NCBI GenBank assembly: GCA_013239625.1
Contig: MU054466.1
Coordinates: 248,001-312,000, forward strand
Direction: 5' to 3'
Source of the DNA: Lama guanicoe
Lineage: Eukaryota
DNA length: 64,000 nt
The notes beneath the pieces were generated by a model. The model was not told the origin of the DNA. It searched no databases and saw only the letters and a list, made by a program, of their open reading frames with translations. Shown here piece after piece: positions 6,977-51,200 of this stretch; the stretch's first letter is position 1, and each line of letters opens with the position of its first letter. Made by a program: the position numbers and the translations under genes.

Positions 6977-7460
6977 GGGTGTCCACCCTCACTGGCAGCC
7001 TGTCCGAGTCACCAGCAAGTCCCATGTCCACGTGTTCTCCATGGCTTCTGGCTTCAGACGGGGCGGGAGCTGCTGATCCTCCAGGTTCTCCAGCTCCGAA
7101 GACTGGCCAGGTCCCAGCAAGCGCACCGCCCTTCCCCATTGTCCTCTCTCCCTGCTGCTGACAGCCTGGACACAGCAGATGGGGGGTCACTGACAGGATG
7201 GGGGCCTGAGTGGGGAACCTGGGCAGGTGCCCTCCCCTTGCGCCTCCTGGGGCAGCTGAGAAGCACTTGGTCTTTGGGGAGCAGGTGCCAGGAAGAGCGG
7301 GACCGTTGCCCAAGCAGTTAGCCCGTATGTACCCCGCAGACAAACGGAAGTGCGTGGTTCTGCACTGACATCAAAGTTCGTAAGTCACCTTCAAGCCATT
7401 TGATGTTCCTCCCAGAAGATGCTGCCCTGAACTCTAAGTTTGTTCCCACAAAGCAACGTC

Positions 7461-7466
7461 AATAAA
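7461..7466 (+). terminator. Polyadenylation signal of CENPX
   Basis: First AATAAA downstream of the CENPX stop codon (about 485 nt). Confidence 0.75.
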
Positions 7467-8616
7467 TCAAAGCCACCTCCCCAGGCACAGCCTCCTGTTG
7501 CCATTAATCACCCCAAGTCGAGTTGCTTCACGTGTGAGCATCCTGCCGTGCACGGGCCTGGCGCTCGCGCAGAGCCCCACACGTGTGGCTGCTCGCCCGG
7601 GATGGTGCCTGTGCCACAGGGCGGCTGTGGGCGTGGGGTGTTACTGCTGGCCGGCAGGCAGGCCCAGGAACATGTGGGCAGGGCTGCTGGGGGTCACACC
7701 CCTGGGAAGGACCGCTGGCCCGGGGCAACTCCAGGGCCAGGCAGGTTGACCCGGCCACGCTTACCTGGGACCTGCCTGGGACCTGCGAGAAGCTGGGTCT
7801 GCAAAGCCTGGCTGCCCTCTGGGACCTCCTCCTGCTTGGCCAGGCCACCTGCAGGCCACAGCATCCACCTCCCGTGAATTCTGAAAGTCTTGGATTCCTT
7901 GGAGCCCAGGAGGACCCAGAGGGCCCTGGGCCCAGCGACCCCGGAGTCAGAGGACCTGGTTTACTGGGGAGGGACAATGGCTTCCCTGCAGCCACGGGCA
8001 CCTGAGGAGCCATGTCCCCACCCAAAGATGGCATGGTTGGCGGGGCAAGCCCTCCCTCCCTAATTTAGTCCTGCTGGCTTCCCCTGCACCCCTTCCCCGC
8101 CTCTGCCCCCCACCTTCCTCTCCCCGCTCCCGGCAGGGAGTCTTGGGGCTTCAAAGCTCTGGGTGCATGTGGAAGTAATTAGACCTGAGGGGAGAGGCTG
8201 GCGACCAGTGCCAGAGCCCGTGCCCCACGGACACTTTGAAGTGCACTCAGATGTGGGGCGGGCGGGGCACCGGGAAACCCCAGGCCAGCCCCGCCCTGCT
8301 GGGTGGGGGCTGCAGCCTCCCGGCTCCTGCCGCCTGCGGCACAGCCAAGGCAGGCCGTGCCTGGAGGTCCTTCTCCTGAGTTCTCAGTGCGTAATTAATG
8401 ACGTCAGGTAAAAACTAAGGTTCAGGGAGAACACCTGTGCCCATTAAGAGACCAAGGCCCCAGCGAGGAGGCCCAGGGCCCAGCCCGGCCAGGATGTGGC
8501 CCATCCAGCCCCAGGGTTGGCTGGAGGCCCGTGGCTGGGAGGTGGGAGCAGGGCGGAGGACGAAAGAGCCCTCTCCAGGGAAGGACGACAGGAGGGTCTC
8601 GAGAGAAGCTCGCGAC

Positions 8617-11600: not shown

Positions 11601-14600
11601 GGGACAGAGGAAAGAGGCCCAGTGCCTCTGGGGCTCCTGGGCACTGCAGAAGGGGGCTGGGAGGGGGAACAGGGGTGGGGGGGGCACCTTGCCCCCGCCG
11701 ACCTAGACTCCTTTCCTTGGTGGGCTTCCAGCCTCTCTGCTGGTCTGGCCCCACCCCCCATTATGGTGGCTGCCCTGGGGAAGCAGACCCCCTCGCCCCA
11801 ACTCAACCTCTGCAGGGCCACCGGTCACTTAACAAAGACCAGCCTCTGTTACTAATTAAAATATCTGAAGAGACTCTGAAGAGGAAACCATTAGGCCAGA
11901 GGGCTGGGGAGGCCCCGGCTGCTCTCCCGGGGTGAAGGGACAGCACATTCCTTCAGCTCTGGACAGCAGCCCAGCAGGGCACCGGATCAACGCTCCGCAC
12001 CCCGGAGCACTCGGGGCCTCCAGCCAGTGGGGAGGGCCGGCTTGGCATTCCCCACAGAGGCTGCGGGTCCGGGAGGAAAGGCGGGGCAGGGCAGCAGGCC
12101 TGGCAGCGTCCCCTCCAGCCTGGAGCCAAACCTGCCCAGCAGCTGGCATACCAGGGCCCTCCTGGGCAGCCGGCAACCTGCAGTGAGGCCTCTGACCCTT
12201 GACCCTTCAGGAGCTCCCCTGGCCGCCCCATGTGCCAGTCCCTTCTCACCCAGACCCCAGAGGCAGTCCTGGCTGCGGGTGCCGGCAGCCAGCCAGGCAG
12301 GCCCATCCTTGCCGGGACAGGAATAGCAGAGAAGGCTGGAAAGCCCCCAAACCACCCCAAAACCGACTTGAGAGGTGCCCTGCTCCCTGCAGTGCCCCCT
12401 CTAAAGAGCCTTCTCCCACTCCTGGGCGGCTGCCCCTCAAGCATCAGCCCCAGCAGCGCCCCCAGCCCAGCAGGCGGCCAGTACCTGAAACAAGGTCAGC
12501 ATGTGGTCGTCCAGGATGGTTTTCGGAGGAGCAATGACTACGGACAGACAGGTGGACAGTTGTCTGTGTCAGGAAGCCCCCCGCCCCCGCCCCCAAGGAA
12601 GACAGATCTGAGAGTGAGGAGGCCTGGGAGCCATGGCCTCAGGGGAGGGGTTTCTGAAGAGCCCCATCAGCCCACAGCACCCTGTCCAACTGTCTGCGGC
12701 AGCAAAAACCCAGCGACAGGCTAGGGAGAGGGCCTGGGGCAGACCCACCTGCGGGGGACCCCTGCTCGCACTGTCCCCGTGCAGTCCTGTGGCGTGACCC
12801 CTCACCACCCAGACACCCACCGCGGGAGAGTGGGAGAGAGGGTCTGGGCAGGACGCAGGGGGCAGAGAGGCCAACCTCCCTCCCCGACCCTGGGTCCCCA
12901 GCATGGGACCCGTGTGCCCGGTGACGCCGCTTCTTGGGAAAGGCTGCTTCGAGCCTGGGCTGGGAGGGGCGGGGGCTGCTGAGCAGGAGGGCCCAGAGAC
13001 ACGCTCACACAGGTGGAACGGCAGCTCGGGGTCACCCAGGTGGCTCCTCACGAAGTCCCGCAAGTCCCCCACTGAAGGAGGAAGCACGGAGTGAGTGGGG
13101 ACCCCAAATTCAGGCCAGCTCCAGGGCCAGGCCCCTCTGTGCAGACCCCCACCCCCTACAGGCCCAGCAGTCTGACCCTGGAGGTATAGAACCTAATGCC
13201 CCCTCAGGCTGAATCCAAGCATGTTCCCGCCCGGCGCCCCCAGCAGCCAGGCCAGCGGGACATCCCTCCCTTTGCCTCTCGCCCTGCCCACCACCAGAGC
13301 CTGAGCTCTGCCCCAGGAAGGCCCCCCCAGGGACCTCGAGGGCCTGCCTGCCGCCCCTGCAGCCTTGGGTCCAGGTCACCAGGTACCCCGCTCAGAACGG
13401 TGGCATCGCTGCCGCGCCAGGCCAAGAAACCACTGCTGGGTGTGGGGAGCCGTGGGCCCACCCTCTCTGGGCCCCCTCCCACCCACGCCCCAGGCAGGCG
13501 GGTTCACGGAGGCACAGGCCCACGGTCGCCGCCCAGCCGGCCTGTGCCTGCTGGCTGCCCCACAGAGACAACAGGGACCTGAAAGCAGCCAGCCCCAGAG
13601 CCCGACGGCCGAGCAGCCACAGTCCCACAGCCCAGAAGGAAGGAGCCGGGAGGGGCTCACAGGGTCCCCACCCTCCCGGGCGCTCACCGGTCTCACTGGG
13701 GCGGAAGCAGCCCTGCAGAACGTGGCGGTCAGGAAACAGGACCCTCAGGACCACCTGGGCCGGGACAGGTGGCTTGTCAGCAGGCCAGCCAGAGCCCGGC
13801 TGCACAGGTGGGCCCACCACGAGGGGCCTCCCAACGCACACTGGGCCAGCCGCCCCCTCAGCTCGGCTGCCCCGACGCCCCGGCCACGAGCTGCACATGA
13901 AGACAAGCCAAGAACCCATGTTTTTCAACTTAAGGTGGGGCTGACTGTTCTTCAGGAACCGTGAGCGTGCAGTCCTCGGCTGAGGCAGGGGACCGCGGCC
14001 AGAAGCGCTCGGGCAGCGGGAGCAGAGCCACATGCAGACCCGCCCCCCGCGTACCTTGGGGTAGCGCTGCAGCTTCTCCTTCATCTGAGCCTCCCGGAAG
14101 GCCCTGGTCACCAAGGGGGCTTCTTCCAGGCGCTTCCTGAGGGGAGGGGCGGGGTGAAGGCCCAGGCCTGTGCGGGCACAGCGGAGGCCCCACACCAGCT
14201 GGACTTCGAGAGCTGTTCCAGCACGCAAGGCCGGGTGGGAGCCCCTGCCCGGGCTCCGCCCCTCCACAGAGCTGCCAGGGCATGGGTGTTGGGGACCCAG
14301 ACTTGGGCAGCAGGGAGCCTCCAGAGGGGGCCAAGGCGCACCCACCGCTCGCTCTTGAGCTGGGCCAAGCGTCTCCTGACGTCGTCCACGGTCACCTCGA
14401 AGAACTCGTCAGGCAGCTCTGAGGGCCAGGCCTGGAGCAGCACTTCCAGGTCGGGGTGGCACACCACGGGGTCTCGGTCCACTGGCTGGGCAGGCGGAGG
14501 GCTCGGCTGACACAGGTGCCCAGGACGGGCCCAGGCCCTTACTCCACGGGACTGGGGTGCTGATGCAGACCCAGGCTGAGCCCAGGCCACGGCTGGCCCC

Positions 14601-17600
14601 ATCTATGGGCCCAGGGCCAGGGCCAGGTCTCCAGGGTGGGATGTGGGATCACCGAGCCTGCCCGCTCAGCCACACCAATGCTGAGATCCTCACCCACCAG
14701 CAAGGCATGTGGTCCTGGGGTCTCGGCTAGACTGGGCCAGCAGGTACCTCGTGACACCCTCATGGCTGGGGTATTGGGCAGTGGGTGGGCGGCAGCTCAG
14801 CAGGGCCAGCCTCCCTTGGCAGCACCTCTGCTCACTTCCTGTCTCTGAGGGAGGCCCCCATGAGCCCCCGGGGGCTGCCCGCTATCAGGGTCCCCCAAAG
14901 CAGGGGACAAACTTGGGGAGCAGCACCCTGGTCAAGGCCACGTCAGGGGCTCCATGGGAGGGGCGGGGAAGCAACAGCCCCCAAATTAGAGGTTTGGCAG
15001 AACCCTGCTAGCCGCTGGCCCCATGGCGAGGCTGACCCACCCCCTCCCTGGGGGAGCAGGCTGGCCCCACCCTCTGACCACCCTGGGGACACAGGAAGGG
15101 ACGGCGTCCCTCCTAATTGGCAGCAATGGGGATGGAAATTACAAGGCAGGCTTGCCAGGCCTGCAGGGCCTCTGGGGGGCTAATTGCAGCGAGTGTCTCC
15201 CGCGCGACCACGGGGAGACCAGGCCTGATCAAGGCGTCCAGCAGGGCTGGCAGTCCTCCCTCCACAAAATGTCCATGAGCCTTCTGGGGTGAGGCCATGG
15301 TGCCTTCTGCTCACTGCCCCGTCCCGGCCTCGGCAAGAAAATCCCGCCTCCCGCCTCTCGACACCCAGGGACGGCTCAGCAGGCTTCTCTGACCATCCTT
15401 TCCTCAGCCTGGCCGCAGCCCCACCTGTTCTAAAGGGCTCCCATGCTGGTCGAGGGCAAAAGCTGCCCGGCAGTCAGGAGCTCACTCCCCCAGTGCACCT
15501 GCCAGGTGTCCCCGGGGCCACTCCCCCAGCCACACCATCCAGGCCACCAGCTGCGCCACACCTCACGATGGAGGGAGGCGGGCGCTCGCCAGGACACCCC
15601 TCTGATCTCAGGGCACTGGGGCAGGGTGGCCAGGAAGGGGTGGCTGAGGCCCGCGCAGCGGGGCCCGAAGGTGGCTGACAGAGGCCCTTGGGGGCTGCCC
15701 CCTCAGAGCCACAATCCTCCTGCAGCCCGCAGGCAGTCCACACCAGAGCTTTTTATAACAAGATGCCAGGCGCCAGGCTGCCCCCCACAGCCACGGCGCC
15801 TGCATTCCAGAGGGGCTGAGTGCTCGCTTGGGCTCCTCGGGGAGGACGAGGGCGGACGCGGGTGTGCCGAGCAGGGCACTGCCATGCCCACGAGTGCCAG
15901 GCCCCGGGCCCTGGGGCACAAAGCCCACAGGCCAAGGCGCGGGCTCTGGGGCTGCCCTGTCCCCATCCCACCCTGGCAGTCCCGGACACACAAGCCCCCT
16001 GGAGAACCCAGCACTCAGGTGACATGCGCTCCAGGGCACGGAGCTGAGGCTGACCATCCAGACATGGCCAGTGAAGCCTGTCCCTGAGAGGAGAAGGCCA
16101 CTCCGGCCTCCGCGCCATCCCGGTGCTGCCAGTGCACAGCCCGTGGTGACCGTGGGGACTGCAGGCCGCTAGCACTGCCCACAACCCCCAGCCCACGGCC
16201 CGCTCCCCGAGGCCCCTTCCAGCACAGGGATGCAGGTGACAACAGCCATTAGCTTCAAGCTGCTCAGGGACCACTGACTTCCCATCAGAAAATAAACTGA
16301 CAAAAATCTCTCTCTGTGTTGGCTCCAACCTCGATCCCACCCCTCCTCCAGGCCACTGCTCTGCTCCAGAGGAGCCCGGAGCTGAAGGGGCTGCCTTGAG
16401 AAGCAGTCTCACACACTCACCTGCACCGCTCTGCACCCCAGGGGCCTCCCCGCTTCTGGGCAGAGAAGCCGGGGTTCCGAGCAGCCTCTGCTGCCCACCA
16501 GGGCCCAGACCACCCAAGTCCTAGAGCTGCCACCATGTCCAGCCCTGGGCAGACCCTGTCCCACAAGAACAGATGGCCATCTGTGGCTGGGCAGGTAGGA
16601 CGGTCACCCAGCTGTCAAAGGGAGAAGCCACGGGGCTTTACACGCCTCCACGTGGCCCGCGTAACAGAGACATTTCCCTGCAGAGAGAAGAGGGGTGGGC
16701 CTGCAGCTCTGCGTGGGGCGAGTGGGGAGACGCTGTGCCGGGGGAGGCCGAGCCCAGGCCCCGCTCACTTCCGACGCCTGGCCAGCCACCTGGCCCCCAT
16801 TCGCTATTGCCTCACCCGCTTCCCCCGGTCGCGGGCAGTTATCACGCATGGCTCCCATCCTAGGTGGGTTTACAGAGATGCTTGTCAACGGAGAACAGAC
16901 GTCTAGGATGACACGTCACTAAGAAAGAAACACCCATGTGGCGGCAACAGTCATTCACGTCTGTTCTCTCACCACCACCACCCTCACCACGGGGCGCGGG
17001 CTCCTGTGCGCTGGCCGCGGCCAGTCCCGGGGCCCAGGACGGGGCTCCAAGAGGAATGTCCCAGCTGGTGCCCAGGGACGCTTGCGGAGCGGCTGGTCTT
17101 CATAGCCCGCATCTCCAGGTCTGCTCTTCCAGAGGTGTCCAGGGAGCCCCGTGGAGGACGCGCCCCCACCAAGAACTCGACATCACCAGGCCTGGGACAT
17201 TCCAGCAAACGCATGGGCTTCCCTCCTCACTGGCTCAAGGCTGGGCTCCTGAGCGCTGTCTATTCCAGAGACACAGCTCCAGCTGCGTCTTCCCGCCCAA
17301 TCCTTTACCCCAGCAAAGTCAGAGGAGTCGTCCCTCCCTCAGTGGCCCAGATGCTGCTATCCGCGAGAGAAGGGGCAGAATAGTGAGGATGCAGCCGGAG
17401 CCAGGGTCTCAGCCCACGGAGTGGCATCTAAGTGACCGTGTCCAACGAGGGGGAACAGGCCTGGACGCCATCCTGCAGGGAGGAGGGGCTGGTCTGCAGG
17501 CTCCGAGGGGGGGCCACAAGGGACCGGACCCCTCTGGCGAAAAGCCTGGCAGGGGCTCTCTTTCCCGCAAGCACACAACCCTGGCAAAGATTCCCAGGTG

Positions 17601-20600
17601 CCAGCTTCCCGCGAGGGTCTTACGGAGAAGAGGATACCCAGAAAACCAGACAGAGTGGGATGGGTCAGACTGCTGGGCTGACACCCACGAGGGGCCCAGA
17701 GGGCGCTTGGGAGGGACAGGGGCACCCTCTGCGGGGGGTGTCCAGAGGCCCAGGGCCGCTGAGATGTGGGGACCTGGTGACTGATGCCTCAGAGGAGCCC
17801 CGCCGCACCAGGAAGACCCTTCAAGGGAGACCCCGGGGAGGGAGGTGTGACGCACTGCCTGCCCTCTGCCCTACGGAGGTCAGTGTGGCCCCAGGCATGG
17901 GCAGGGCCAGGCCCGGAGGGGACAGCCAGAGGACGTGCTCCAGCGGCGACCCGCTTGGGCACACGGGGTCCCCTCATGTCAGAAGCGGCCTCCCTGCTGC
18001 TGCGGTTTCATCTTCTTGACGGTAATTTTCCAGGACATGATGACACACGGAGAAAAAATGTGAAAAATATGTGGAGGTGACCTCAACCCCAGATCTTCCA
18101 GCTTCCTCGTGAGGGCGCTTGTCTTCCTCCCGCCGGCCCACAGGCCTCCCTCTCAGCCCAGACTCTCCTCTGACAATGGTTTTTGGTAACAGGGAACATG
18201 AAGCCTTTTCCCTTGAGGCTTGGAGCTTAAATGAATCACTACTCCAGGGACGCGGGCCAAACCTCTGTCACTCCCAGAGCCAGCCGCCCTCTGGAAGGAG
18301 CGCCGAGCCAGCACGAGGCTGACTGACCGGACAGCCCTGCACCCTGAACCCGAGCGCCTGGCCCGCCCGCCCTGGGCTGGCGTCCACCCCCGGGCCCGCC
18401 CCTCCTCGAGCAGAAGAAACGAGGGGAGAGCTTTCCGGAGCTGGAAAGGCTGGGCCAGGGTGGCACGCGGGTACCGTCTGAAGCGGGGCTGCTCCCAGGC
18501 GCCTGGTGTGGCCGGGTGCACGTGTCCGGGCACAAGGTCCACAAACCCCCAAAGGACTGAAGGAGCAGACACGGGGCACGATGGGGGAGGCTCTCCTCAC
18601 CTGCACACCTGGCAGCTGCCCCCAGGGAGCCCAGGGAAACTGGGCACTCAGGTCCGTGAGCCGCAGGGGGTGGACGCACACCGTGGACCAAAGGGCCAGG
18701 AGCAATCCCAACAGGGAGCTCTGTGCGCTGATCTGGACCGGGTAATGCAAACCAGGGGGGCCCGGGTGCCCACGCACCCACCGTCCACTGTGGCTCGCAG
18801 GCTCGACACCCATCTCTCCCCGAGTCATCGTGACTGAGACCCGGCAGGACAGAGACAGCTGGAGGGGAACCTGCCTGTCACCGGGCTTTAAAAACTGCCT
18901 CAAGACTTGGCCGGGACCTTCAAAGCCAAGGACCCGTCTGCCAGCAAACCTCGGCGGGCATTCCAATTGAAGCCAACACTGTTCTTCTCAGGACAGTTGG
19001 GCCCCTGGGCCGCCACCGGCACCCAGGGGGCATCCACCCACAGGGCAGGGCCAGGCCCGCACTGTGACCTGGGGCCACACATGGGGGGAAGCGGGGGTGC
19101 CCTTGAGGGGCACGTCACAGACAGGCACCCCAGGCTCTGGCCAGGCTCCTCCCAGCCCCGTGTTCTAAACCTGCCTGTAAGTAAAGCAGGGAGCAGGAGG
19201 CAAGGCTGACACCTGCCTGAGGCAGGGTGCAAAGTGCCGGGCGAGACCCTGGGGCCGCGTCTCCAGCAGACGAGACCACCCCCTGGAAGGTGAAGGGGGG
19301 GGACCGCTGTCAGCGCCCGCCTTGCCCAGGGGGTCGGGGCCTTTGATCACAGACCCCTGTGCCAGCTGCGTGGGGGGACGCCTGCTGGGATCACACCGGC
19401 AGCACAAAGGGCTGCGGGGCGGCCTCCGGGGCCAGCGGGAGGACTTCAAAGGACAGGCCAGGGGCCGCTGGGCAGCCCAGCCTCTCCCCGCACCCGGCTC
19501 TGACGGCCAGTAAAACTACCTTCTAATAATTAACGTTCTGAGATCAAAGGCGGTAGCCGCCCGGGTCTGTAAACCATCCCGGGCCTCAGCCGAGGACCTG
19601 CCTGCATTTTATCCTGTCTCTTCTGACTCTCTATTCAAATCCAAAACCACACACAGGCAAAACATTAATGGGGAACTTGGAAACTCTTTTTGATTACTAA
19701 AGTGTACCTTTGAAGTTCCCCCAAAAGTTCTGTTTTGTTCCCTTCTCCCCTCCCCCAGGACTTAAGGGGACACAAAGCAGACACCATGTGGCTGGCCGGG
19801 CCCCCGGGTGTGCGGCTGTCAGTGACAGGAGGCGTGAGGCAGGCGGGCGGGGGACGCTCCACAATCAACCAGCTGCTGGGGCTCCCAGATCAAAGACACG
19901 CACTGCTGGCAGCCAGGCGGACTGTCCCCGGGACCCCTCCTTCTTGGAGCCCCTGGGGTCAGTGCTCGGGGAGGCACTGGGACACTGCCCCTGGACAGCA
20001 ACCACATCCCGGGCCAGCACCAGCCCCCCAGACACCAGCAGGTTCCCAAGAGACACAGAGACCTGCAGCCTTCAGGGTGGGAGAAAGTGACAGCTAGCCC
20101 TGGCACCAGATTTCTGGCCCCCAAACCCTGGGGCCTCCAGAGAGAGCAGGTCCAGTGGGAGTCAGGCCCCAACCACAAGTGTTCGCTTCTGATGGCTGAT
20201 CTCAGGGTCCAGGCTGTGAGACAGGGGACTTCATGCTGTTTCTAATGGGGTCCATACACCAGCGTAGAAGCTACTGGGTCCCCAGAGGGCCAGAGCACTA
20301 CCATTGCCACCTCCCCAGGATGCACACCTGTCAGGGGGACTGCCTGGGTCCCCCACCCCTCCCCTGTCCATTCAGCAAGAACACACAAAGGGGGGCTCAG
20401 GGAACAGGAGTGGTCCCGGCGCCTGCCCCTTGGCAGGGATCCAGGCTCTGTCCCACGGCCAAGCCCCCCCCCAACTAGGCCCTGCAGGCACAGGTGCCCA
20501 ACCCTCCCCCATCCCCAGGGGTGTGACCTGGAGGCAAGAGTGAGGAGGAGGCCCCAGAGGAGACAGGATGCAGGCGGCGAGCTCCAGAACTAAAACGTTA

Positions 20601-23600
20601 GTTAACCACAACCAGCAGTGTTGCTAACACCATCACTGAAACGGGACGGATACCTGGAAGGCAAGGACGGCTTTATGGGGGAAACCGACCCAGGACCTCA
20701 CCACACAAACAAACTGAAGGAGGAAGAAGACATGGGGTCATCTCGACGTGGGAAAAACAGCTCATAAAGCTTTATAGCCCGCTTACAATAAAGAAAAATT
20801 CTCAGGACGGTGGGAATAGGAACTCCTGACTTGATAAAGGCTTTTCCACAGCACACATCATCCTTCAGGTAAACTACTGCCTCCAACGTCATGGTCAAGG
20901 TCAAGCAGGGACGCCCACTGAACTGGCTGCCAGTCAACAGACACCAGAGGCCCAGCCACTGCGACATGACAAGAAAACACTTGAGAGAAGGAAGAGCATC
21001 AAGACAAAAAACAAAACTGACATGACTTGCAGAGACTCCAAGTGAAGCCAAGCACTGCTGGAACCAGTGAAGCAACAAGCCCACAGCCTTCCAGCCCCCG
21101 GAGCCTCCTCAGGGGCCAAGCCCAGGAGGTGGGCAGCCCAGTGCTGGGGAATCCACATGCCTCTACTGGCAGCAGGGTCTGTGAGCACTGTGCAGTGAGC
21201 AGTCACATGGAGGGACCCCAGAAGGCAGTGGAAGCTCAGTCGTATGACTTGTGACAGCCCTACTGAAGAAGGTCCTGCACCAGCATCCAGCTGGAAAACA
21301 CCCCACAGGGGCTCAGGCCTGTCCCCTAGCTTAGATGCTCCGACAGGGCTGCAACGGGCCAGGGCAGCCTGACCCACCAGACCGGCACCATCAGATGGAG
21401 GGGTGGAAGACACTGGTGCGATGCCAAGAGCCACCTGCAGAAGTGTCGCCCACCTGGGGGGGGGCCCTTGCTCGAGGGGCCACTCCCTGACCCGTCACTG
21501 CCTGTTCAATGTGACCCAAATTGCAGGACGCCTTCCATCGCTCATGTCTGTTGCGGTCAGAGCAGTGGACAGGGGTGGGCATCACTATGGGGGAGGGGGT
21601 GGGACAGGGACGACTGGAGCCCGAGGCACTCAAGGACAGACTCAGCATCGAAGACAACGTGCTGCTGGCAAAACCTGCCCAACACTGCAAAACTGGTGGT
21701 GGTGTCTACACAGTAAGTTATACCTCAACAGAGCTAACCACACAGAGAAGACGTCAAAGTGGCAGCCCAGGGCCCAGGCCAGTTCATCCCAGCTCAGGGA
21801 GAGCTGCAGCCCTCCTCCCAGCTGCGGCTCAGGGTGGCCAGGCGCTTCCACGCCCCAGTCCCTGCCGGAGACGCCCAAGGCCCCACCCACAACGCCTGTG
21901 AAGGGGGAGCAAACTCGCCCTCTCCCGCCTGTTCAGGGAGCGCCCCACACGCCCACGGGCTGGTGGCGCAGACAGCGGGGGAGCTGGGGGGATGCCCGGC
22001 TCAGGGGTAAGCGTGGTGTGGGACAGTCAAAGCCAAACCTCCTTCACGTCAAAAGCCAGCCAAAGCCAGCAGCCCAGGCAGAAAGTGGCAGTGCCAGGAG
22101 GCAGGTTCTCCGGCTGTGACGTGGCTATGGGGACACACAGGTTTGCCAAAACCTACCCACCTGCATTTCTAAAATGATGACTCAACGAAGCTGATCTCAG
22201 ACCGAACAAAACCCCAAGAGCGCTCCCCAGAGACGATGACAACGCGCCCAGCAACCCTGCTGTACCCCAGGCTGACCGGCCGGAGGTCAGGCCACAGACA
22301 AAGGACCCCGGCGCCCAGCACGCCCTTACCGGCTCCGGCTCCGGCTCCGGCTCCGGCTGGGGCTCCTGGCCAGGCCTTGACTTCTTCGGCTTGGAGGGGC
22401 CCGCAGGGCTGGAGAAGGACTTTGGCAATTTGGCTGAAGATGACATGAGAGGCCTTGCGGACCCGGAGGGGCCCCCCAGCCGCTGTCCTCCACCCGAGAA
22501 AGGAACAAAAGGGGCAGGTGAGGGCTCCTTCAGGATCTGCTCTGTCTGAGCGTCTGTGAGGCCGGCCCCCAGGCTGGCTGTCTCGTCCTGATGGCTCACA
22601 TCGCCCTGGCTGAGCCCGGCTGAATTCAAAGGAAGCCGAGGGCCGCTGGCGGCCTGCTCGGCCTCTGTGGATGGCATCAGGCTTCCCGGGCTTTTGCTCC
22701 AGGAGGGCCCAGGCTCCTGCTTGCCAGCAGAGTCACATCGCTTCATGGCAAACCTGCAGGGGGAGGCCCAGAGAGCAAGAGAAACTCCACACTCAGCCCC
22801 TGCCCCCGGACTCCAGCGTTGTGCCCTCTGGTGATGGCCACACCAAATCCAGTCCCGTGGATGCTCGACTCCCCACGGCCCCATCCCGTCCACCGCTCCT
22901 GGGGACAGGAGCACATACGGGCCCCCATGCAGCCCTGTCCACCCTGCAGCCAGCAGACCCCTGACCGGACACACCACGCCCCACGGCGCCCAGCCTCCCA
23001 GGCTGCTGGCGGGAGAAGCCACTGGGCAGGGCAGCTGGGCGTTCCCATGTTTGCTATTCCCTGTCCTCAGAGACCCCAGCTCTCTTTACCAAACCAGACT
23101 CAGATGCCCCCACCTGATGATGGCACTGCCCCCGGTGAGGCCCAGCGACTGCAGTGTTGTGCTCTGCAGGGCAGCCCTGCCAGTCACCTGTTGGGAGGGA
23201 AGGACATCCTGCTGACCCCTCCCTAAGCGCCCTCCGCCTGCCAAGCCCACCACGCGCCACCTGCCTCCGGCCGGGCACTGTGTCATGGGTACCGCAGGGT
23301 CCCCTGAAGGCGTGGGTCCAGCCCCTGCACCCTAATCTACACCCACGTGTTTGTCAGCTGGCCCGCATCGGTCCCCCCACCCCACCCCATGTGAGGGCTT
23401 GGCAGGCAGAGCTCGGGCCAGGTGAGCCAAATCTGGCCCGCGGACCAGCCCTCTGAGCGCTGGGACTGACCACGATGGCCCCAATCCAGGCCCAGATGCC
23501 CGAGGCCCAGTGGTCTGTCTCCTCCAGCGGAGGGAGGGCTCGTGCCCCAGACGCCTCCCACTCACAGCCCTAAAATACCTGCCCTTCTCAGCCCTGGGTC

Positions 23601-26600
23601 AGGAATCTCCAACTGGGATAAAGAGGTGGGCGTGTCTCGTCCACATCGCGGGGCCCTCGGGGATGGCGGCCACCCCCGGCCAGGAGAGGGCGCTTGGCCA
23701 GGGTGAAAACAAAAAGCCCCTGTGAGCCAGGGGACCAAGTGCCAGGAGGGTCCCCGTCACGGGCGGGCAGGCGGGGACAGCAGGGCCTCAGTGCCAGGCC
23801 AAGCCTGCACCACGCCGCACTCGTTTTGAAAAAGATCAAAACACAGAGCAAAGCAAATATTTATTAAAATGAAACCACTTTTGTGACTCCTGGGCTTTGG
23901 GAGAAGCTGAGAAAACAAACAGGGCTCTGAGGGAGGTTTGGGAGCAGCCCGGGCGGCCCGCGGTCGGTTCCAGTGGAGCCGGCGTCGTGCCTTTTTTCCA
24001 TGAAACACATCACGCTTTCAGAGCCCAAGTCTCCCTGTCGCTGGTTTGAAGGCAGGTCTGAGGGAGTGAATTTTCCAATTGGAAAGTGGGGCTGGGCCTG
24101 CGTGAAGACAGGGAGTGGGCGGCGGGGCGCGGGCCAGGCGGGCGGGCCGGCAGCTCACCTACCTCACCCCTCATGTACACGCAGACTGGGCTGGCCTCAC
24201 ACGGCTGCTCCAGACACTCCCTGCAAGGACAGAAGAGAAAGCGCCACAGGTGGCTGCTGCCGGGGGGCACGGGGGCCCTCTGGACGGTACCCAGCCAGTC
24301 ACCGTGGAAAACTGCCCGCCCTGACTGCCCCCATGGCTGGCCGTCAGCAAGTGGCCTGGGGGTGTCTCCCACCTGCCTCCAGGCCCAGAGCACAAGAAGG
24401 ACACAGAGCAGGGGCACAAGCCTCGGGTCACTGTCAACTGTGCTTGGGGTTGGCAGTGAAAACCTCCCAGGGACCCTGAGAAGCAGCAGTAGCACTTGGC
24501 ACGAACCCACTATGTGGACTCTGAGGGGGGCTTGGGGGTGACACCAAGACAAATGGGGCAGCGGAGGGGTGGACACCGCCACCAACGTCCTCCCCTGTAA
24601 ACCAGAGCTTAAGATGGGAGGGAAGGGCACCGGGAAGGACAGGTGGACAGGCTTGAGGATGCGGGTGAGCGGGCACACAATGTCACCCACACCCACGGGA
24701 CAGCCATCCCCACCGCGCACCGACCTGCGCTGGCCCTCGAGGTTATGGGGCACCGCGTGGCCGAGCCCTGACTCAGGATGGTTAAATGGCTGGCAGCAGG
24801 CCTGTGACAACCAAGTAAAGTTGAGTCCTACATCTCCTGACACAGAACTACAGAACTGGCGCCCAGATTGACGCCCCAGGCCCCAGGGCTCACACGGACA
24901 CACCCCGCCAGGACGGGGGAGAGTGGCTGGCTGTGACTGCACACGGACGCTCCAAACACTGGTGACCGCACACTCCGTGTGGGCTCAGCTCCTTTCGCCA
25001 CCTGTCTCTCTCATTCACTTTCAGTTTTTGCTTCTGTGTGTTTCCCTGGGCGAGGACACACAGCCCAGAGCCTGCTGCAGGGGCCCCGGGAGGAGATCGG
25101 CCCACGCTCTCCCCAAGCCTGTGCTTTACCAAGAAGCTGCTCCCCAGGGAAGGCTTCCGGCCCTCAACCAGGACAACGAGCAACGCAGGGCAGCCATGGT
25201 AGGTGTGGCCCTGCACACGCGGCAGGGCCAGGTCATGACCCAAACGGCGGGGGAACTGGCCCACCAAGCCCCAGCAACCCCCGGCCTCAAGAAAACCCGA
25301 GACTCCGAAGCACCAGGGAGACGACCCCAGCTGGGCCTGCGCGCTCTTTGTCCTGAGGCCAATACAGAGAAGGAGCGAGGGAGGTGCGCTCCAGCAAACA
25401 GGGTCGCAGGACCAGGAGGGGGAAGGAGGTGGGGAGACGTGGGGGTCCCCTTTCTCCCAAGGGCGACAGAGACAAACACCTGGGCTCAGAAAGCGGGCTG
25501 ACCGCCCATCACGGGACAAGCGGGGTCCCCTCTGCTCTCAGGGTCTCCGGCCAGGAGTCCTCACCAGAGATCCCTGCCCAGGGCACCCGATGGTGACACG
25601 GGGGACCACAAATCATAAACAGGGATAACGCACGGCAGCGCCCGGGAAGGCCTGCTTGCCTGCCGCCCTCAGAGGCCTTGGACATCAAACAGCCGCGGCT
25701 TTGATGTCGGCTCCTCCAGGGGGATCAGGTTCCCGAGTGTGGGATCTGAGGAGAGGCCTGTAAACACGCCGAGGGGAGGAGTGGCCGCGATCGCTTCCAG
25801 ACCTTCTCGGCCGATTAGCAGCCTCTCCCATCCACGCGCAAGATCAGGGACCTGGGCGTTCCAGGGCGTGAGGGAGGAGAGCCGCCCCTCCCCCAGTAGG
25901 TCTTGCTGAAGGTCTGCGGGTCTCCAAGGGAGCTCAGCAGGGCTCCCGGGACCCCTGGACCCTGGACCTGCTCCCACACCCCTGCCCGGGCAGAGCCACG
26001 GGGCGCCACTTGGCCTGGAAGACGGTGCCGGGGGTGATTGGTGGGGTCTTGTTCCCTCTAAGGCCAGCAAACCTGTGCCTGTGGCCGGGCCAGGGGCCGG
26101 GTGGGGCGGGGGCTGCGGCTGCTGTGTTCTTCACCCCCGCAGAGAGGCCACCTCCTGGGCTTGGGCCGTGACACCAGGAGCCTTCCCTGCAGAGATGCCC
26201 AAGAAGCAGAGGTGAGACTGGCCAGCCCACTCGAGGCCAGTGTTATCTACGGCGGGTACCGGCCCACGTGGGCACGAAGCATGCCCAGAGCCGGCACGGG
26301 GGAGGCCGGCTCCAAGTGTGAGAGCTCCTACCAACAACAACATGGAACACCTCCTCCCCCACTGGCCGCGTGCACAGAGAGCGGCACCTGGGACACGCCG
26401 GGCTGAGTTAACTGTGTTCCTGAGATTAACTGCGCCTGCTTTCACTTTCCTTTGCTGTGGCTGCCAGAACACTCTGAATCACCTCTGTGTCCGCACATGT
26501 GGCCCACGTGGCCCAAACACTGGACAATTAGTTGCTCCAGATGCTGGGGTCAGAGCTGGTCACCATCCACCCTGATCCCCAGGCAAAGGAGCCGCCGCCT

Positions 26601-40300: not shown

Positions 40301-43300
40301 ACATAGCCAGAAAAGGATCACCCCTCCTCATCCATTCTCACTCACCCCCGGAGGAACTCATCTGCTTCAGGTTCTAGGGTAGCCTTTCTGCCTTTCTTCC
40401 CGCAGAGATGAGCATGCTAAGTGGACAGAGGTGCAGACTCTTTCTCTCCTTCCTTCTTCCACAATAGGTAACACAGAACATACCTTCTTTGTTCTTTTCT
40501 CTACAGCCTACGTGTCCCATTCTGGGACTAGGTCTAACTCCGTTCCCCTCTACACACAGTACATCCAGAGTACAAAGTCTGTGATATGGGCGGTCACAGC
40601 ACCCAGGCGGCCCTGGGAGTGGATAGCAGTGAGGTCTAGGCTCCCCTGCCCACAGTGAGTGGAGCTTTGACACCTCCTAGCTGCCTGGGCCTGTGTTCTT
40701 TGTCGGTAAAACTAGACCCAGGGAGGTGGAGGCTCAGGCAAGGGAGCCAGACAGAGCATCCCAGGCAGCAGTTCCCCCAGGTGGCCGTAGGAAGCCCTGA
40801 ACCCAGTCAGAAGGTGAGGCTGGGGTCGTCACCCAGGCTGCACAGAGTCCCTTCAAGCCTGGCCCAGGCCCCGGCGGAGTGCTGGGGTGGGGGTGGGGGG
40901 GTAAGGTTTTTTCCAGGTATCCCTAGTGGGACCAAGCCTGTGTTCTCCAAAAAACAATATTTCCAATTGTCATTCCATTAGGACTTCAGGTCACAGGTTA
41001 GGGGTAAAAATCCCCTGGCTGGGCTGGCCTGGGAACCGATCTCCCACGTGAACCCTTGGGAAAGGCATGGCTCCCTCTCAGAGCAAGTGGCCTCTCGGCC
41101 CCTCTGAGCTGGACCCTGGGAGGCAGGGCCCTGCCCCATGCCCTGCTTACAGTCCAGCCAAATGCATTGGAAATATACATATGCAAATATATACATAAGT
41201 GTGGTAAAATTGCATTTTAAATTTAATCAGCTTAAAATTTGCTTTCCAAGACAGGTCTTTCAGGAGATTTTCTGTGTTATCAATACGGCAGTGGCTTTCC
41301 ACAGCCAAGGAGTAAAACGTAAGGTCCTGGCGGCCGCCTGCTCTCCACCCTCACCGCCCTCCACTGCACCGCACGGCCTCGCCAGTCCTTGCTCTCTGTC
41401 ACTGAGTGCCGGCATGCTCAGCCCGCTCCCCAGGACTTTCCTCAGCTCCCTCACGGCGCTAGGGCTATGCCCACGTGTCACCCACAGGGGGCCTCCCTGA
41501 CCCCATCCCACCTGCTGCCCTCTGCCAGGTGTCTACATTTTCTCTCCCCTCCTGACACCACATCATCCCCCCACCCCACCCACATCAGGTAAGCCTGGGA
41601 CAGGACCCCAGTGAGCAAGTGTGTGATTGTCAGTGCGTCAGCGCATGGGGCTGCCCCACGCCGGTGTCACTTGGTGGCCTCCAGGCAGGGCAGACACCTG
41701 GGCAGGTGAGAACCTCGGCTCATCCTCACACGAGCAGGAGAGATCACACTGCTGATTTCCCCAAATGAGCTGCATGTCTAAGTTGCCCCCCGACCGGCTG
41801 GCAGAAAAAATCAGCACGCTGGCTTCAGGGGCTTGCTGGGCCCTTGGTGTCCTGCTCTAGGAAATGGATCCTGGCCCCCAGGTGGACGGCGAAGGTGTCC
41901 CTGCAAGGGGTGTAAGCGAGCGCTCAGTGCGGCCCCCACCGCCCTCTAACCAGCCCTGGGACGCCAGCACAGTGGGGTCTGGACAGGGCAAGGGAGGCCA
42001 CCTTCCCACCCCTCCCCACCAGAGTGCTCCCTCCCAGGCAGTGGCGGCTTGACAGCTGTTCCCAGGATCTGCTTTAAATTAAAAAGTGGCGTGGCCCTTT
42101 AAGAGAAGCATCCGCCGCCCCCGCCGCCCTGCTGCCCCCTTTGAAGTTGCTGGCGCTGAAAGGTTCCCAGTGGCAGATCTGAGGGTTTGCTTCTGCCTCC
42201 CCAGAGGCCACGTGCGGATCACAGGGAGGGAGTGGGGCGGGCCGAAGGTCACATGGCCAGCCAGGCCTCCCTGGACCAGTGGGCTGCAGGGATGGGGACC
42301 AGCCGGAGCTCATTAGGGCTCGGCAGAGCCAGCAGCTAGGAGAGCTAAGGAGGAGGTGTCCCGCCCTCCCCGCGGGGCCTGGGGCAGCCTGACCTCCCCA
42401 AAGCCCTCTGATCTGCACAGTGAGGAACACACCTGGCACTTTGGGGATGCTCCATGACACCCCAAGAAGCTCCATCTCCACAGAGGTGTGGACAGCCCCT
42501 CCTATCCCCATCCCCTTCCTCCCCCCAGCTTTGGAATGTGGCCATTCCCAGCAGACCCAGGTGGACCCACACTCCACAGATTGCTCAGGTCAGCTGAGGG
42601 TCCCTCTGCTGAGACTGCCCACCAGCCAGGCGGGGCTGTGTGGGGAGGGTGAGATGGGGCAGAGGTACTGAGAGGTGGACAGATCCTTACAAATGACCAG
42701 TAGGGTCCAGGGTCCCCAGGAGTTGAGCCTGGGGCCAGGGAACCCCATGCGTCCTCTGTTCACTGGCATGAGGGGCTGCAGAGTGAGCCCCAGGGGCCCT
42801 CACCACTCAATGACGACAGCCCTGACTCCCACATGCTCTCAGTCCTGGGTGAGGGGTGTGTGGGTCCCTTCTGCAAGTGACCCCAAGGCTGCTGACAGCC
42901 ATCTGATTCTCGGGAGAGGGTGTCTTCTGGTATCAGGCCTGAGAGCTGTCCATGAAGGCCTGGGACCAACCAGGTGTTCCCGGCTTTGCCCTCCCCTGCT
43001 TCTGCACCAGACCCCTCCAGGCTAGGGCTTTTCTCATCAGGGCCCTGGGATGTGAGGTGAGAGGGGCTCCTGCAGACAGATAGGGGGCTTGGGGAGACCC
43101 AAAGGGCTCAAGCTCTGTGGCCACACAGCCTGGGCTTGACGCCCCTGCCCGCTCAGGGCTGGTGACGGACCCTCAGCTGGTAGGCGAGCAGGGCTTCCTC
43201 TCAGAGCCAGCCACTGTGGGGAGCGAAGTGGTCTGCCTCACTTCCTTGCCTTCTTGGGCCTCAGAGGCCAGCAGCTGAGACACAGAGCCGCCCAGGTGGT

Positions 43301-47727: not shown

Positions 47728-47957
47728 NNNNNNNNNNNNNNNNNNNNNNNNNNNNNNNNNNNNNNNNNNNNNNNNNNNNNNNNNNNNNNNNNNNNNNNNN
47801 NNNNNNNNNNNNNNNNNNNNNNNNNNNNNNNNNNNNNNNNNNNNNNNNNNNNNNNNNNNNNNNNNNNNNNNNNNNNNNNNNNNNNNNNNNNNNNNNNNNN
47901 NNNNNNNNNNNNNNNNNNNNNNNNNNNNNNNNNNNNNNNNNNNNNNNNNNNNNNNNN
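47728..47957. other. Assembly gap (230 N)
   Basis: Run of n in extremely GC-rich DNA upstream of the NOTUM ATG. Confidence 0.99.
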
Positions 47958-48256: not shown

Positions 48257-51200
48257 ATGGGCCGAGGGGTGCGCGTGCTGCTGCTGCTGGGCCTGCTGCA
48301 CTGGGCCGGGGGCGGCGAGGGCAGGAAGACCTGGCGGCGCCGTGGCCAGCAGCAGCCCCCGCCGCCGCCGCCTCCGCCCCGGGCCGAGGCGGCGCCGGCG
48401 GCCGGACAGCCGGTGGAGAGCTTCCCGCTGGACTTCACGGCCGTGGAGGGCAACATGGACAGCTTCATGGCGCAGGTCAAGAGCCTGGCGCAGTCCCTGT
48501 ACCCCTGCTCAGCGCAGCAGCTCAACGAGGACCTGCGTCTGCACCTCCTGCTCAACACGTCGGTGACCTGCAACGACGGCAGCCCCGCCGGGTAAGGTCC
48601 GCAGCCGCCCGCGCGACCGGCGCGCCCCTGCCGGTGGCCCCGGGGCCGCGGGCCGTCTTGTCGCCAGTGGGGTCGCACCACCGCCTCCCTGTTTCCGCCC
48701 AGACGCACGGAGTCTCTGCGCTGGACCCTCCTTGCTGGCCTCAGCGGTGCTCGCCCCGGGGAGAGGGCTCCCGTCGAGCCTCGGAGGCGCTGGCCCCGGA
48801 GAGGCCCGGCTCGGCGACCCGCCGCGCGGGGGGTGGGGCAGCGATTGAAGCCCTGGTACCAGGCCAGCCCGGGCACTGACCCCTCGGCCACCGGTGCCCA
48901 GCCCCCGTGCTCGCGTCCTTCGGTCCCTGGGCGGGGAGATGGCGGTCCGAGAGTGGCCCTGGCTCCAGCAGGAGGAGGCGACACAGCGGGGCGGGGAGAG
49001 TCCTCCCCCGTACTCCCACCCCCACCCCAGCTCGACTCGCCCCGTCTGCTGCCTGCGGCTGCCTGGACTGCCAGGGATCCCAGCCAGCCGGAGAGACAGG
49101 CAGGGGGCGCAGGTGGGACGGAAGAACCTGGGGTGCGGCATTCGCCCATCTCCAGCCCGAAGTAGATGGAAGGAAGGATGCGAGGCTGGGGGTTGGGGAG
49201 GAGTTGGGGGCACCCATGCCCTCAGCGACTCCACAACACGAGGAACGCAAAGTTAGATCGGGCCTCGGTAGGACGGCTGCGACCCGCCTCTGTGGCGCCC
49301 GCGCCCCTCCACGCCCGCCTGTCCGACCCCAGTGCCTCTGCCCCACGCACACTCTTCCAGCGAGGGCGCTTTTCACTCTCCAAGCGCCACTGCGAGCCTC
49401 AAGGAGAATCCCGAGCCCCAGTGAAGACCCCCCTCCTCCGCGCCGGGCCGCGGGCGCCGAGGTTACAGCGCGTCCCGCGCGGGGCGGGCCGTGGGGATTT
49501 TCCACGGATCACACAGCCCCTCGCCGCCCTTCCCCGCCCTGCGAGCGCCATCTCCCGGAACTGGCCGATGCTGGCCGGGCCGGGCGCGCTCTGCAGGGGC
49601 CTGGCCGCTGGCGCCCCCGTGCGGCGCGGGCGCTCGGCGACAGGTGGAATGACCCTTTCCTCCCCGGAGCTGGGCCCTGCAGCCCAAGCTGACCACCCGC
49701 TCTGCCCGACCTCCCTTGCAGCTACTACCTGAAGGAATCCAAGGGCAGCCGACGGTGGCTACTCTTTCTGGAAGGTGAGTCCCAGGGGCTGAGGAGGCGG
49801 GTTGGGCGAGGGTCCCCTGGGCACTGGACCCTGAGGTGGTGGCTATGCACGCAGGAGGCTGGTACTGCTTCAACCGGGAGAACTGCGACTCGCGGTATGA
49901 CACCATGAGGCGCCTCATGAGCTCCAAGGACTGGCCACGCACTCGCACAGGTCAGCAGGCCATGGAGTGCCCAGGAGTCCCCTGCTGGGGGAAGGGGGCT
50001 GACAATCTGAAGTTCTGGAAGAAGCCCCCCTCCTTCACTCCCTAGAGCCCCAGAGAGGCCCCACTCCATCCACCCCTCCCCTCCCCCAAGGGTAGGGAAC
50101 GCTCACACTCGCTCTTCGTGCTTATTCCACAGGTAACTTCCCAGGGCTCACCGTGCCTGTGCGGTACGTGGTCGGTCCCTAAATGAAAGCAGTTGGTGGA
50201 GTGGCCATGCCAGATATCACAGCCTGGCTGGGCATCCTGGCCCTGGTGACTCTGTGGAGTAACTAAACCCGTCCATTCCCCACTTCCCTGGCCACCCTGG
50301 TTCAGGCAGGTGTCACCACCCACCTCCTTGCTGGGACCAAGTAGGATACCCCCACGTCCCCAGCCTTCCTGCCGTCCTCATCCCTGTATGCCCCCTCCCC
50401 CCAGAAAGACCCACTGCCTCTGTCCTCCCGGCCACAGGCACGGGGATCCTGTCCTCCCAACCAGAGGAGAACCCCCACTGGTGGAACGCCAACATGGTGT
50501 AAGAAGGGGCAAAGGGTCCTTCCTGGGGGTCCTGTCCATGGGAGTCCTTCGTGGACAGTCCTTCCTAAGGGGGCTCTTAGGGGGAGTCCATCTGAGGGGT
50601 CTTGTCCTTGGGAGGATCTTGTCCTGGGAAAGATCCTTCCTGGGGCAGGGGTCCTAACCTCAGGAGTCCTTCCTGGGGAAGGTGGTCCTTCCTGGGGTCC
50701 TTGGGCAACAGAGGAGCATGGCTCACGTCGTCCCTGTGTCACAGCTTCATCCCCTACTGCTCCAGTGACGTCTGGAGTGGGGCTTCATCCAAGTCTGAGA
50801 AGAGTGAGTCCCCTGGCCTCCCCCTCCCTCCCCCTCCCAGAGCCAGGGCAGGGGAGATGGAGATTCTGGGGAAATACAGACTTTCAGCCTCGTCACTTCC
50901 TCTAACCCTTTGATATGTGTCCCAGGGTGCCCGTCTCCAGCACCCACTGGCTGGCTTGTACATGGCAGGCCTGACCCTTGGGGGGGGCGTCGCTTCTGGG
51001 TGTTCCCTGGGAAAGGGCCCCCAGAACAGCCTTGTATACCTGATCCACCTCCCTTCAGTCTACCCCAGCCCCTGGCCTCATCCCCTGGAAGACCCTCCAA
51101 GCCCCCAGCTCTATCCCTCCCCCTTCCAACCTGGGGGTAGGAGGCCTTGCTCTCTGCCCAGGCCCCTACTCGAAGCATCCTCCTTCCCCGTGCAGACGAG

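What the first reader, a model, noticed from the sequence alone, without database searches (positions are those of the whole stretch)
18919..19895. Dense TCF/LEF cluster in ASPSCR1 intron 7: candidate long-range Wnt-feedback enhancer for NOTUM
Seen: six CTTTGA(A/T) sites in 977 bp, including the optimal AGATCAAAGG (19541-19550) flanked by GC-rich CGGTAGCCGCCCGG, CCTTTGATC at 19340 and AGATCAAAG at 19887, plus CAGTAAAA and TAATAATTAA homeobox-type motifs. Chance expectation is about one per 4 kb at uniform composition and lower here. Known: NOTUM is a beta-catenin/TCF-induced Wnt antagonist, and human ASPSCR1-TFE3 fusions join after ASPSCR1 exon 7, so breakpoints fall in this intron. Inference: ASPSCR1 hosts NOTUM's Wnt enhancers about 28 kb from its promoter, and fusion breakpoints could split or rewire them.
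Basis: partly seen in the sequence, partly recalled or inferred. Interest (0 to 1): 0.8.

Follow-up and report, generated by a model that had tools for sequence, protein, structure and literature searches.

The report
TCF-site cluster in ASPSCR1 intron 7
Six binding motifs for the Wnt-pathway factor TCF/LEF really are packed into 1 kb of an ASPSCR1 intron, 28.5 kb from the Wnt-feedback gene NOTUM, in what is probably a camelid genome, which makes a reasonable but untested candidate Wnt-responsive enhancer.

Summary
Six CTTTGA(A/T) sites lie at 18919-19895, every quoted motif is at its stated coordinate, and nothing is duplicated or tandem.

The cluster is well above chance:
- about 0.2 sites are expected from local composition;
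- P is about 2e-4 to 1e-3 window-wide against the window's own site density;
- it is the largest cluster among 120 composition-matched permutations of the motif (6 sites, next best 3).

The gene map also holds. ASPSCR1 (TUG) runs on the minus strand and the cluster sits mid-intron 7 (exon 7 ends at 22330, exon 8 starts near 14485). The NOTUM start codon is at 48257 on the plus strand, 28.4 kb away. The exons match Camelus TUG at 95-100%, so the species is probably a camelid.

Function is untested. 

One paper lists β-catenin ChIP-seq peaks in human SW480 cells upstream of NOTUM and inside ASPSCR1, and both genes fall on CTNNB1 knock-down. By position, the intragenic peak more likely matches an intron-4 element near 25.7 kb than this cluster.

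Verdict: a plausible new Wnt-responsive element, with its target (NOTUM, ASPSCR1 or both) open. The idea about fusion breakpoints is speculation.

The parts
18919..18925 (-). CTTTGAA site (TTCAAAG on the + strand). It is an outlier 422 bp from the other five and does not fit the longer A-S-W-TCAAAG consensus.
19341..19347 (+). CTTTGAT site within CCTTTGATC, which fits S-CTTTGAT-S.
19445..19451 (-). CTTTGAA site (ACTTCAAAGG on the + strand). It fits A-S-W-TCAAAG and is also loosely like a DR1 nuclear-receptor site (TTCA-A-AGGACA).
   Evidence: the DR1 resemblance is my own reading
19508..19533 (+). Homeodomain-type motifs CAGTAAAA (19508-19515) and TAATAATTAA (19524-19533), at the start of an AT-richer patch (37-54% GC against 63-77% around it).
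19541..19550 (+). AGATCAAAGG, the optimal TCF/LEF HMG site (CTTTGAT at 19543-19549 on the - strand).
19556..19561 (+). GCCGCC, a Helper-like (C-clamp) motif 5 bp 3' of the optimal site. It is followed by C, not R, and its presence is not beyond chance.
   Evidence: consensus from PMC4999783
19708..19714 (+). CTTTGAA site that fits A-S-W-TCAAAG. It lies inside places 19641-19726, which the reads tool would not lay.
19889..19895 (-). CTTTGAT site (AGATCAAAGA on the + strand) that fits A-S-W-TCAAAG.
22330..22752 (-). ASPSCR1 (TUG) exon 7, residues about 170-310 of Camelus dromedarius TUG. It is the upstream boundary of intron 7.
   Evidence: (95% identity over 143 aa)
14345..14485 (-). ASPSCR1 exon 8 (PVDRDPVVCHPDLE...KSER), the downstream boundary of intron 7.
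48257..48592 (+). NOTUM exon 1 coding part, from ATG ([11 protein letters not shown]...) to ...CNDGSPAG. A CpG island and an N run (47728-47957, left untouched) lie just upstream.

Best explanation
The cluster is a Wnt-responsive element: a billboard of five to six TCF/LEF HMG sites, five of them within 555 bp at 19341-19895, set around a short AT-richer patch that also carries homeodomain-type motifs. In Wnt-active cells, TCF7L2, TCF7 or LEF1 bound to these sites would recruit β-catenin and co-activators. The element would then contact a promoter in the same regulatory neighbourhood. The most likely promoter is NOTUM's, 28.5 kb away across the ASPSCR1 promoter, and the host gene ASPSCR1 may respond as well. 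More NOTUM means more Wnt deacylation, which gives negative feedback. Shown here: the motif cluster, its non-randomness and the gene geometry. Shown in the literature for human cells only: NOTUM and ASPSCR1 both depend on β-catenin, and β-catenin occupies sites in this gene pair. Inferred: occupancy of this particular element, looping, and the choice of target.
For: Six sites against about 0.2 expected from composition. Window-wide P is 2e-4 to 1e-3 against the empirical density. It is the largest cluster among 120 composition-matched permutations, 6 against at most 3. Four of six sites fit the extended TCF consensus. The sites are independent, not copies of one another. This is the densest TCF-motif cluster in the 64 kb that holds NOTUM. 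NOTUM is a direct β-catenin target with a ChIP-seq peak, and a second peak is listed inside ASPSCR1, in SW480 cells (PMC3961325 Table S1). Validated Wnt-responsive elements such as CREAX and c-Myc-335 carry about four TCF sites plus CDX-type sites (PMC8421206), a density and grammar similar to this one.
Against: There is no conservation, chromatin or occupancy evidence for this element. Three of the six sites are the weaker CTTTGAA form. The helper-like motif is no more than chance. With 3394 possible patterns, one cluster of this strength somewhere is roughly expected, so significance rests on the motif being specified in advance. By position, the human β-catenin peak listed for ASPSCR1 fits intron 4 better than intron 7. 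That estimate uses human exon coordinates recalled from memory. The ASPSCR1 promoter lies between the element and NOTUM.
Confidence: 0.4

Rival explanations
1. It is a chance cluster with no regulatory role. CTTTGAW is a common word in this window, and six copies happen to fall together in neutral intronic DNA.
For: The word is generally over-represented here: 21 sites outside the cluster against about 11 expected. A cluster of this strength is about what one expects for one of about 3400 candidate patterns. Half the sites are the weaker CTTTGAA form. There is no helper enrichment and no functional or conservation data.
Against: For the pre-specified motif, P is 2e-4 to 1e-3. No composition-matched permutation exceeds 3 sites. 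Extended flanks fit the TCF consensus in 4 of 6 sites. The cluster lies next to a canonical TCF target gene.
Confidence: 0.3
2. It is a Wnt-responsive element that serves its host gene ASPSCR1, or another neighbour, rather than NOTUM.
For: The element is about 16 kb from the ASPSCR1 start (ATG near 35477) against 28.5 kb from NOTUM. ASPSCR1 mRNA fell by log ratio -0.87/-0.90 on CTNNB1 siRNA in SW480 and is in the 162-gene direct-target list.
Against: NOTUM fell more (log ratio -1.35/-1.16 on the two siRNAs) and, unlike ASPSCR1, was re-checked with an independent shRNA. ASPSCR1 is broadly expressed and is not known as a Wnt feedback component (my own knowledge). Only one paper in the library lists it as a target.
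Confidence: 0.12
3. It is a tissue-specific enhancer driven mainly by other factors (homeodomain/CDX, forkhead, or DR1-type nuclear receptors such as HNF4A or PPAR). The TCAAAG words are then secondary or are parts of those sites.
For: The AT-richer patch at 19500-19800 carries CAGTAAAA, TAATAATTAA and a GTAAAC-type motif. Two of the CTTTGAA sites read TTCA-A-AGGNNN, loosely like a DR1 site (my own reading).
Against: The three best sites (19341, 19543, 19889) have poor second half-sites for a DR1. None of the other motifs was tested for enrichment. CDX-type plus TCF grammar is itself typical of Wnt-responsive elements, so this rival overlaps the main reading.
Confidence: 0.15

Closest known systems
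AXIN2 Wnt-responsive elements (promoter/intron 1 sites and the downstream CREAX enhancer)
   Same: They serve a negative-feedback Wnt target controlled by clusters of about 4-8 TCF sites within roughly 1 kb. CREAX combines four TCF sites with CDX-type sites in a flexible billboard (PMC8421206; PMC3961325).
   Different: Those elements are validated by ChIP, mutagenesis and reporters. They lie in or just beside their own gene, not inside a neighbour.
Drosophila Notum (wingful) Wnt-responsive enhancers with HMG plus Helper sites
   Same: They control the orthologous feedback gene through TCF, and the pairing of an HMG site with a GC-rich Helper (GCCGCCR) is the defining grammar (PMC4999783).
   Different: Here only one of six sites has a nearby GCCGCC, it ends in C rather than R, and that is no more than chance. 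The mammalian Helper is only RCCG and needs C-clamp isoforms. There is no sequence homology.
c-MYC-335 enhancer (long-range TCF7L2-bound element)
   Same: It is a distal element with four TCF sites plus CDX sites that acts on a promoter far away.
   Different: It lies in a gene desert 335 kb from its target and is proven by genetics. This element is 28.5 kb away, inside another gene, and unproven.
Enhancers lodged in introns of bystander genes (ZRS in LMBR1 for SHH; FTO intron for IRX3)
   Same: The proposed arrangement is the same: an element inside one gene's intron serves the neighbouring gene (my own knowledge).
   Different: Those cases rest on deep conservation and genetic proof. Here neither is available, and the host gene may itself respond.

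Membership tests
Wnt-responsive element (TCF/β-catenin-dependent enhancer) | Several consensus TCF/LEF HMG sites clustered within about 1 kb, beyond chance | tested here: met
   Six CTTTGAW sites in 977 bp and four fitting A-S-W-TCAAAG; expectation 0.2; P 2e-4 to 1e-3; matched permutations reach at most 3.
Wnt-responsive element (TCF/β-catenin-dependent enhancer) | Occupancy by TCF/LEF and β-catenin in Wnt-active cells | not testable with these tools
The human SW480 peak listed for ASPSCR1 probably maps to intron 4, not to this element.
Wnt-responsive element (TCF/β-catenin-dependent enhancer) | β-catenin-dependent reporter or endogenous activity that is lost when the TCF sites are mutated | not testable with these tools
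   This needs an experiment.
Wnt-responsive element (TCF/β-catenin-dependent enhancer) | Evolutionary conservation of the sites | not tested
The metagenome pattern scan returned 26 AT-rich chance matches with no homology beyond the pattern.
Wnt-responsive element (TCF/β-catenin-dependent enhancer) | A linked gene that responds to Wnt/β-catenin | tested here: inconclusive
   NOTUM (ATG 48257) and ASPSCR1 are both present. Their β-catenin dependence is shown only in human SW480 cells, not in this species.
Bipartite HMG-Helper (C-clamp) site architecture | A GC-rich Helper (GCCGCCR; RCCG in mammals) close to functional HMG sites, more often than chance | tested here: not met
   Only 1 of 6 sites has GCCGCC within 25 bp. 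6.2% of the window lies that close to one, so P(at least 1 of 6) is about 0.32. The motif reads GCCGCCC, not GCCGCCR.
ASPSCR1 intron 7 (the intron broken in ASPSCR1-TFE3 fusions) | Location between the exon encoding residues about 170-310 and the exon beginning PVDR...VCHPDLE | tested here: met
   Seven exon blocks lie upstream (35444 to 22330) and exon 8 lies at 14485-14345. That human fusions join after exon 7 is from my own knowledge and was not verified in the library.

The most novel reading that the evidence does not exclude
ASPSCR1 intron 7 carries a conserved long-range Wnt-feedback enhancer of NOTUM. NOTUM's Wnt responsiveness would then depend on DNA inside a neighbouring gene. In humans, t(X;17) breakpoints in that intron would either remove the element from the NOTUM allele or place it beside TFE3.
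Probability: 0.2. Interest if true: 0.55.

Novelty: new member of a known kind. Interest (0 to 1): 0.33.

Why it matters
NOTUM is a drug target and a key Wnt feedback inhibitor in liver zonation, the ageing gut, Apc-mutant clone competition and bone. The paper searches run here found no described distal Wnt-responsive enhancer for it. A defined element would give a handle for studying how NOTUM feedback is set, and for interpreting non-coding variants at the NOTUM/ASPSCR1 locus, where two bone-density signals lie upstream of NOTUM (PMC6766646). If the host intron is also the ASPSCR1-TFE3 breakpoint intron, rearrangements could alter NOTUM control on one allele. That would be a side effect of unknown importance. 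Even if true, the finding is an incremental addition to a well-understood class of elements.

Tried and rejected
1. Orthologous loci for a conservation test.

It returned 26 loci, all 25-53% GC, with no similarity beyond the pattern. These are chance matches. None was mammalian and none was taken for human.

3. Sequencing runs. DNA runs of four closely related organisms and some RNA runs hold the stretch. I draw no inference from that. They were masked with N in local BLAST, and the Rfam scans were run on either side of them.

4. Repeat or duplication origin: rejected. There is no second copy in the window and no tandem array. A transposon origin cannot be excluded without a repeat library.

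5. Known RNA family: none at Rfam gathering thresholds in 14600-19640 or 19727-22300.

6. Helper-site (C-clamp) grammar: not enriched.

7. Literature on a NOTUM enhancer in ASPSCR1: none found. Attempts to verify the human exon-7 coordinates in papers failed.

8. A first dinucleotide-shuffle script gave no answer and was replaced by Markov simulation and analytic estimates.

Exons were searched by ORF reference with a region restriction, or mapped by local tblastn of a database protein.

Full report
**Observation**

The pattern CTTTGA(A/T) occurs at 18919(-), 19341(+), 19445(-), 19543(-), 19708(+) and 19889(-). That is six of the 27 matches in the 64-kb window.
- AGATCAAAGG at 19541-19550, followed by CGGTAGCCGCCCGG
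- CCTTTGATC at 19340-19348
- AGATCAAAG at 19887-19895
- CAGTAAAA at 19508-19515
- TAATAATTAA at 19524-19533

Five of the sites fall within 555 bp (19341-19895), spaced about 100-180 bp apart. The site at 18919 is an outlier.

**Is it more than chance?**

- A first-order Markov model fitted locally predicts 0.19-0.21 sites in the interval for block sizes from 125 to 977 bp. The AT-richer patch at 19500-19800 therefore does not explain the cluster.
- In 600 simulated windows the largest 1-kb cluster was 5.
- The word is more common in this window than composition predicts: 21 sites outside the cluster against about 11 expected. The fairer null is random placement at the observed density. That gives P(max cluster >= 6) = 1.1e-3 with 27 sites and 2.4e-4 with 21.
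- Among the 120 permutations of the same six bases plus W, CTTTGAW has both the highest total (27, mean 5.3) and the largest cluster (6, next best 3).
- Among all 3394 hexamer+W patterns it ranks 47th. Most of the 40 top rows printed sit in AT-rich islands or simple repeats at 40, 53.8, 55.7 and 58-59 kb.
- With that many possible patterns, one cluster of this strength is about what chance gives. The statistics are convincing only because the motif is the one you would choose in advance for a window holding NOTUM.
- Four of the six sites also fit the longer consensus A-S-W-TCAAAG, against 5 of 21 elsewhere (Fisher P = 0.07).
- The sites are not copies of one another. Local BLAST of the region against the window finds nothing but itself, and no tandem array covers it.

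**Gene context**

Minus-strand ORFs carry recognisable ASPSCR1/TUG exons. A word search with the ORF that reads through exons 9 and 10 returned 'tether containing UBX domain for GLUT4' from many mammals, with 100% identity over the exon to Camelus proteins.

Local tblastn of the Camelus dromedarius protein P0025 lays out the exons:

| Exon | Window coordinates (minus strand) |
|---|---|
| 1 | near 35444 |
| 2 | 34528-34469 |
| 3 | 31893-31771 (tblastn block) |
| 4 | 30251-30150 |
| 5 | about 24219-24160 |
| 6 | about 23187-23113 |
| 7 | 22752-22330 |
| 8 | 14485-14345 |

The remaining exons run down to about 8.6 kb.

- Intron 7 is therefore 22329-14486 and the cluster sits in its middle.
- Exon 7 is 95% identical to the dromedary protein, and DNA runs of four closely related organisms hold 96-98% of the stretch. 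The window is probably from a camelid other than the dromedary. This is an inference.
- NOTUM lies on the plus strand, with its ATG at 48257 ([11 protein letters not shown]...) and further exons to about 54.7 kb.
- A CpG island and an N run (47728-47957) lie just upstream of the ATG. I left the N run untouched.
- The cluster is 28.4-29.3 kb from the NOTUM ATG and about 16 kb from the ASPSCR1 ATG. The two genes are transcribed divergently.

**What else bears on function**

- The GC-rich flank of the best site contains GCCGCC 5 bp away, which resembles the C-clamp Helper (GCCGCCR in flies, RCCG in mammals; PMC4999783). Only one of six sites has such a motif within 25 bp. Since 6.2% of the window lies that close to one, this is expected about a third of the time. 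I do not count it as evidence.
- The AT-richer patch carries homeodomain-type and forkhead-like words. This is reminiscent of the TCF plus CDX grammar shown for CREAX and c-Myc-335, each with four TCF sites (PMC8421206). I did not test these motifs for enrichment.
- Two of the weaker CTTTGAA sites also look loosely like DR1 nuclear-receptor sites. This is my own reading.

**Literature**

- No paper in the library describes a NOTUM enhancer inside ASPSCR1.
- Watanabe et al. 2014 (PMC3961325) combined β-catenin ChIP-seq with CTNNB1 knock-down in SW480 cells and named NOTUM a bona fide direct target.
- Their Table S1 (hg18, peaks within 20 kb of a TSS) lists a peak for NOTUM at chr17:77,518,010-77,518,353 and a peak for ASPSCR1 at chr17:77,543,410-77,543,988. 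Both genes were down-regulated: NOTUM by log ratio -1.35/-1.16 and ASPSCR1 by -0.87/-0.90.
It also raises ASPSCR1 itself as a possible target.
- By my recollection of human coordinates, the intragenic peak lies about 15 kb into a 40-kb gene and about 4 kb before the end of exon 7. These coordinates are unverified, apart from the anchor that hg19 79,921,522 and 79,934,194 are 'upstream of NOTUM' in PMC6766646.
- Scaled to this shorter gene, that position corresponds to about 25.2-25.5 kb in intron 4.
- The human counterpart of the intron-7 cluster would be more than 20 kb from either TSS, so that table could not have listed it. The paper therefore neither supports nor contradicts this particular element.

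**What could not be done**

- The one metagenome scan gave only chance matches.
I draw nothing from it.
- No contig that I take for human was fetched. The human proteins listed were not used.

**Verdict**

The observation and the gene geometry are confirmed. The cluster is a good sequence-level candidate for a Wnt-responsive element and is the densest TCF-motif cluster in the NOTUM neighbourhood. Its occupancy, conservation and target are all open.

| Reading | Probability |
|---|---|
| TCF-bound Wnt-responsive element acting on NOTUM, with or without ASPSCR1 | about 0.4 |
| Chance cluster | about 0.3 |
| Element for the host gene, or driven by other factors | the rest |

The link to ASPSCR1-TFE3 breakpoints is geometric speculation about another species. 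If confirmed, this would be a new member of a well-known kind of element.

Noticed in passing
window 25681-25708 (context 25560-25860): There is a 28-bp palindrome, GACATCAAAC-AGCCGCGGC-TTTGATGTC, in ASPSCR1 intron 4. One arm is a consensus CTTTGAT and the other a near-consensus GTTTGAT. A forkhead-like TGTAAACA lies at 25761. By position it is the likelier counterpart of the human SW480 β-catenin peak listed for ASPSCR1 (PMC3961325 Table S1).
   Followed up: partly
window 7368-8240: Four WTCAAAG sites lie in 871 bp just 3' of ASPSCR1's last exon, with SOX-like ACAAAG/TTTGTT words at 7440-7455 and an AATAAA overlapping one site. This is the second-densest TCF-motif group in the window but is not significant alone (P about 0.09-0.15).
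   Followed up: partly
window 42138-42147: A single ACTTCAAAGG site lies 6.1 kb upstream of the NOTUM ATG. It is the same 10-mer as two sites in the cluster and has a GCCGCC within 25 bp. Its position is roughly where the human SW480 'NOTUM' β-catenin peak lies, about 5 kb upstream by coordinates I recall.
   Followed up: no
window 14000-23500: RNA runs X15-X18 hold about 0.32 of the sampled words of this stretch, although exons 6-8 make up only about 7% of it. So some intronic RNA is present in those libraries.
   Followed up: no
window 47728-47957: A 230-base N run lies inside the NOTUM promoter CpG island, about 300 bp upstream of the ATG. It hides part of the promoter where proximal TCF sites might lie; CTTTGAT at 47336 is just outside it.
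   Followed up: no
proteins P0001, P0002, P0004: These are short 'proteins' from Logan/NCBI contigs of 3-16 kb. They align at 30-42% identity over the whole exon 9-intron 9-exon 10 read-through of the query. They are probably ORFs called on genomic contigs of other mammals and could supply orthologous intron DNA once contig look-up is open again.
   Followed up: no
whole window: CTTTGAW is over-represented across the window even outside the cluster. There are 21 sites against about 11 expected from dinucleotide content, and it is the commonest of 120 composition-matched permutations. This may be a general k-mer bias or a real excess of TCF-type sites around NOTUM and ASPSCR1.
   Followed up: partly
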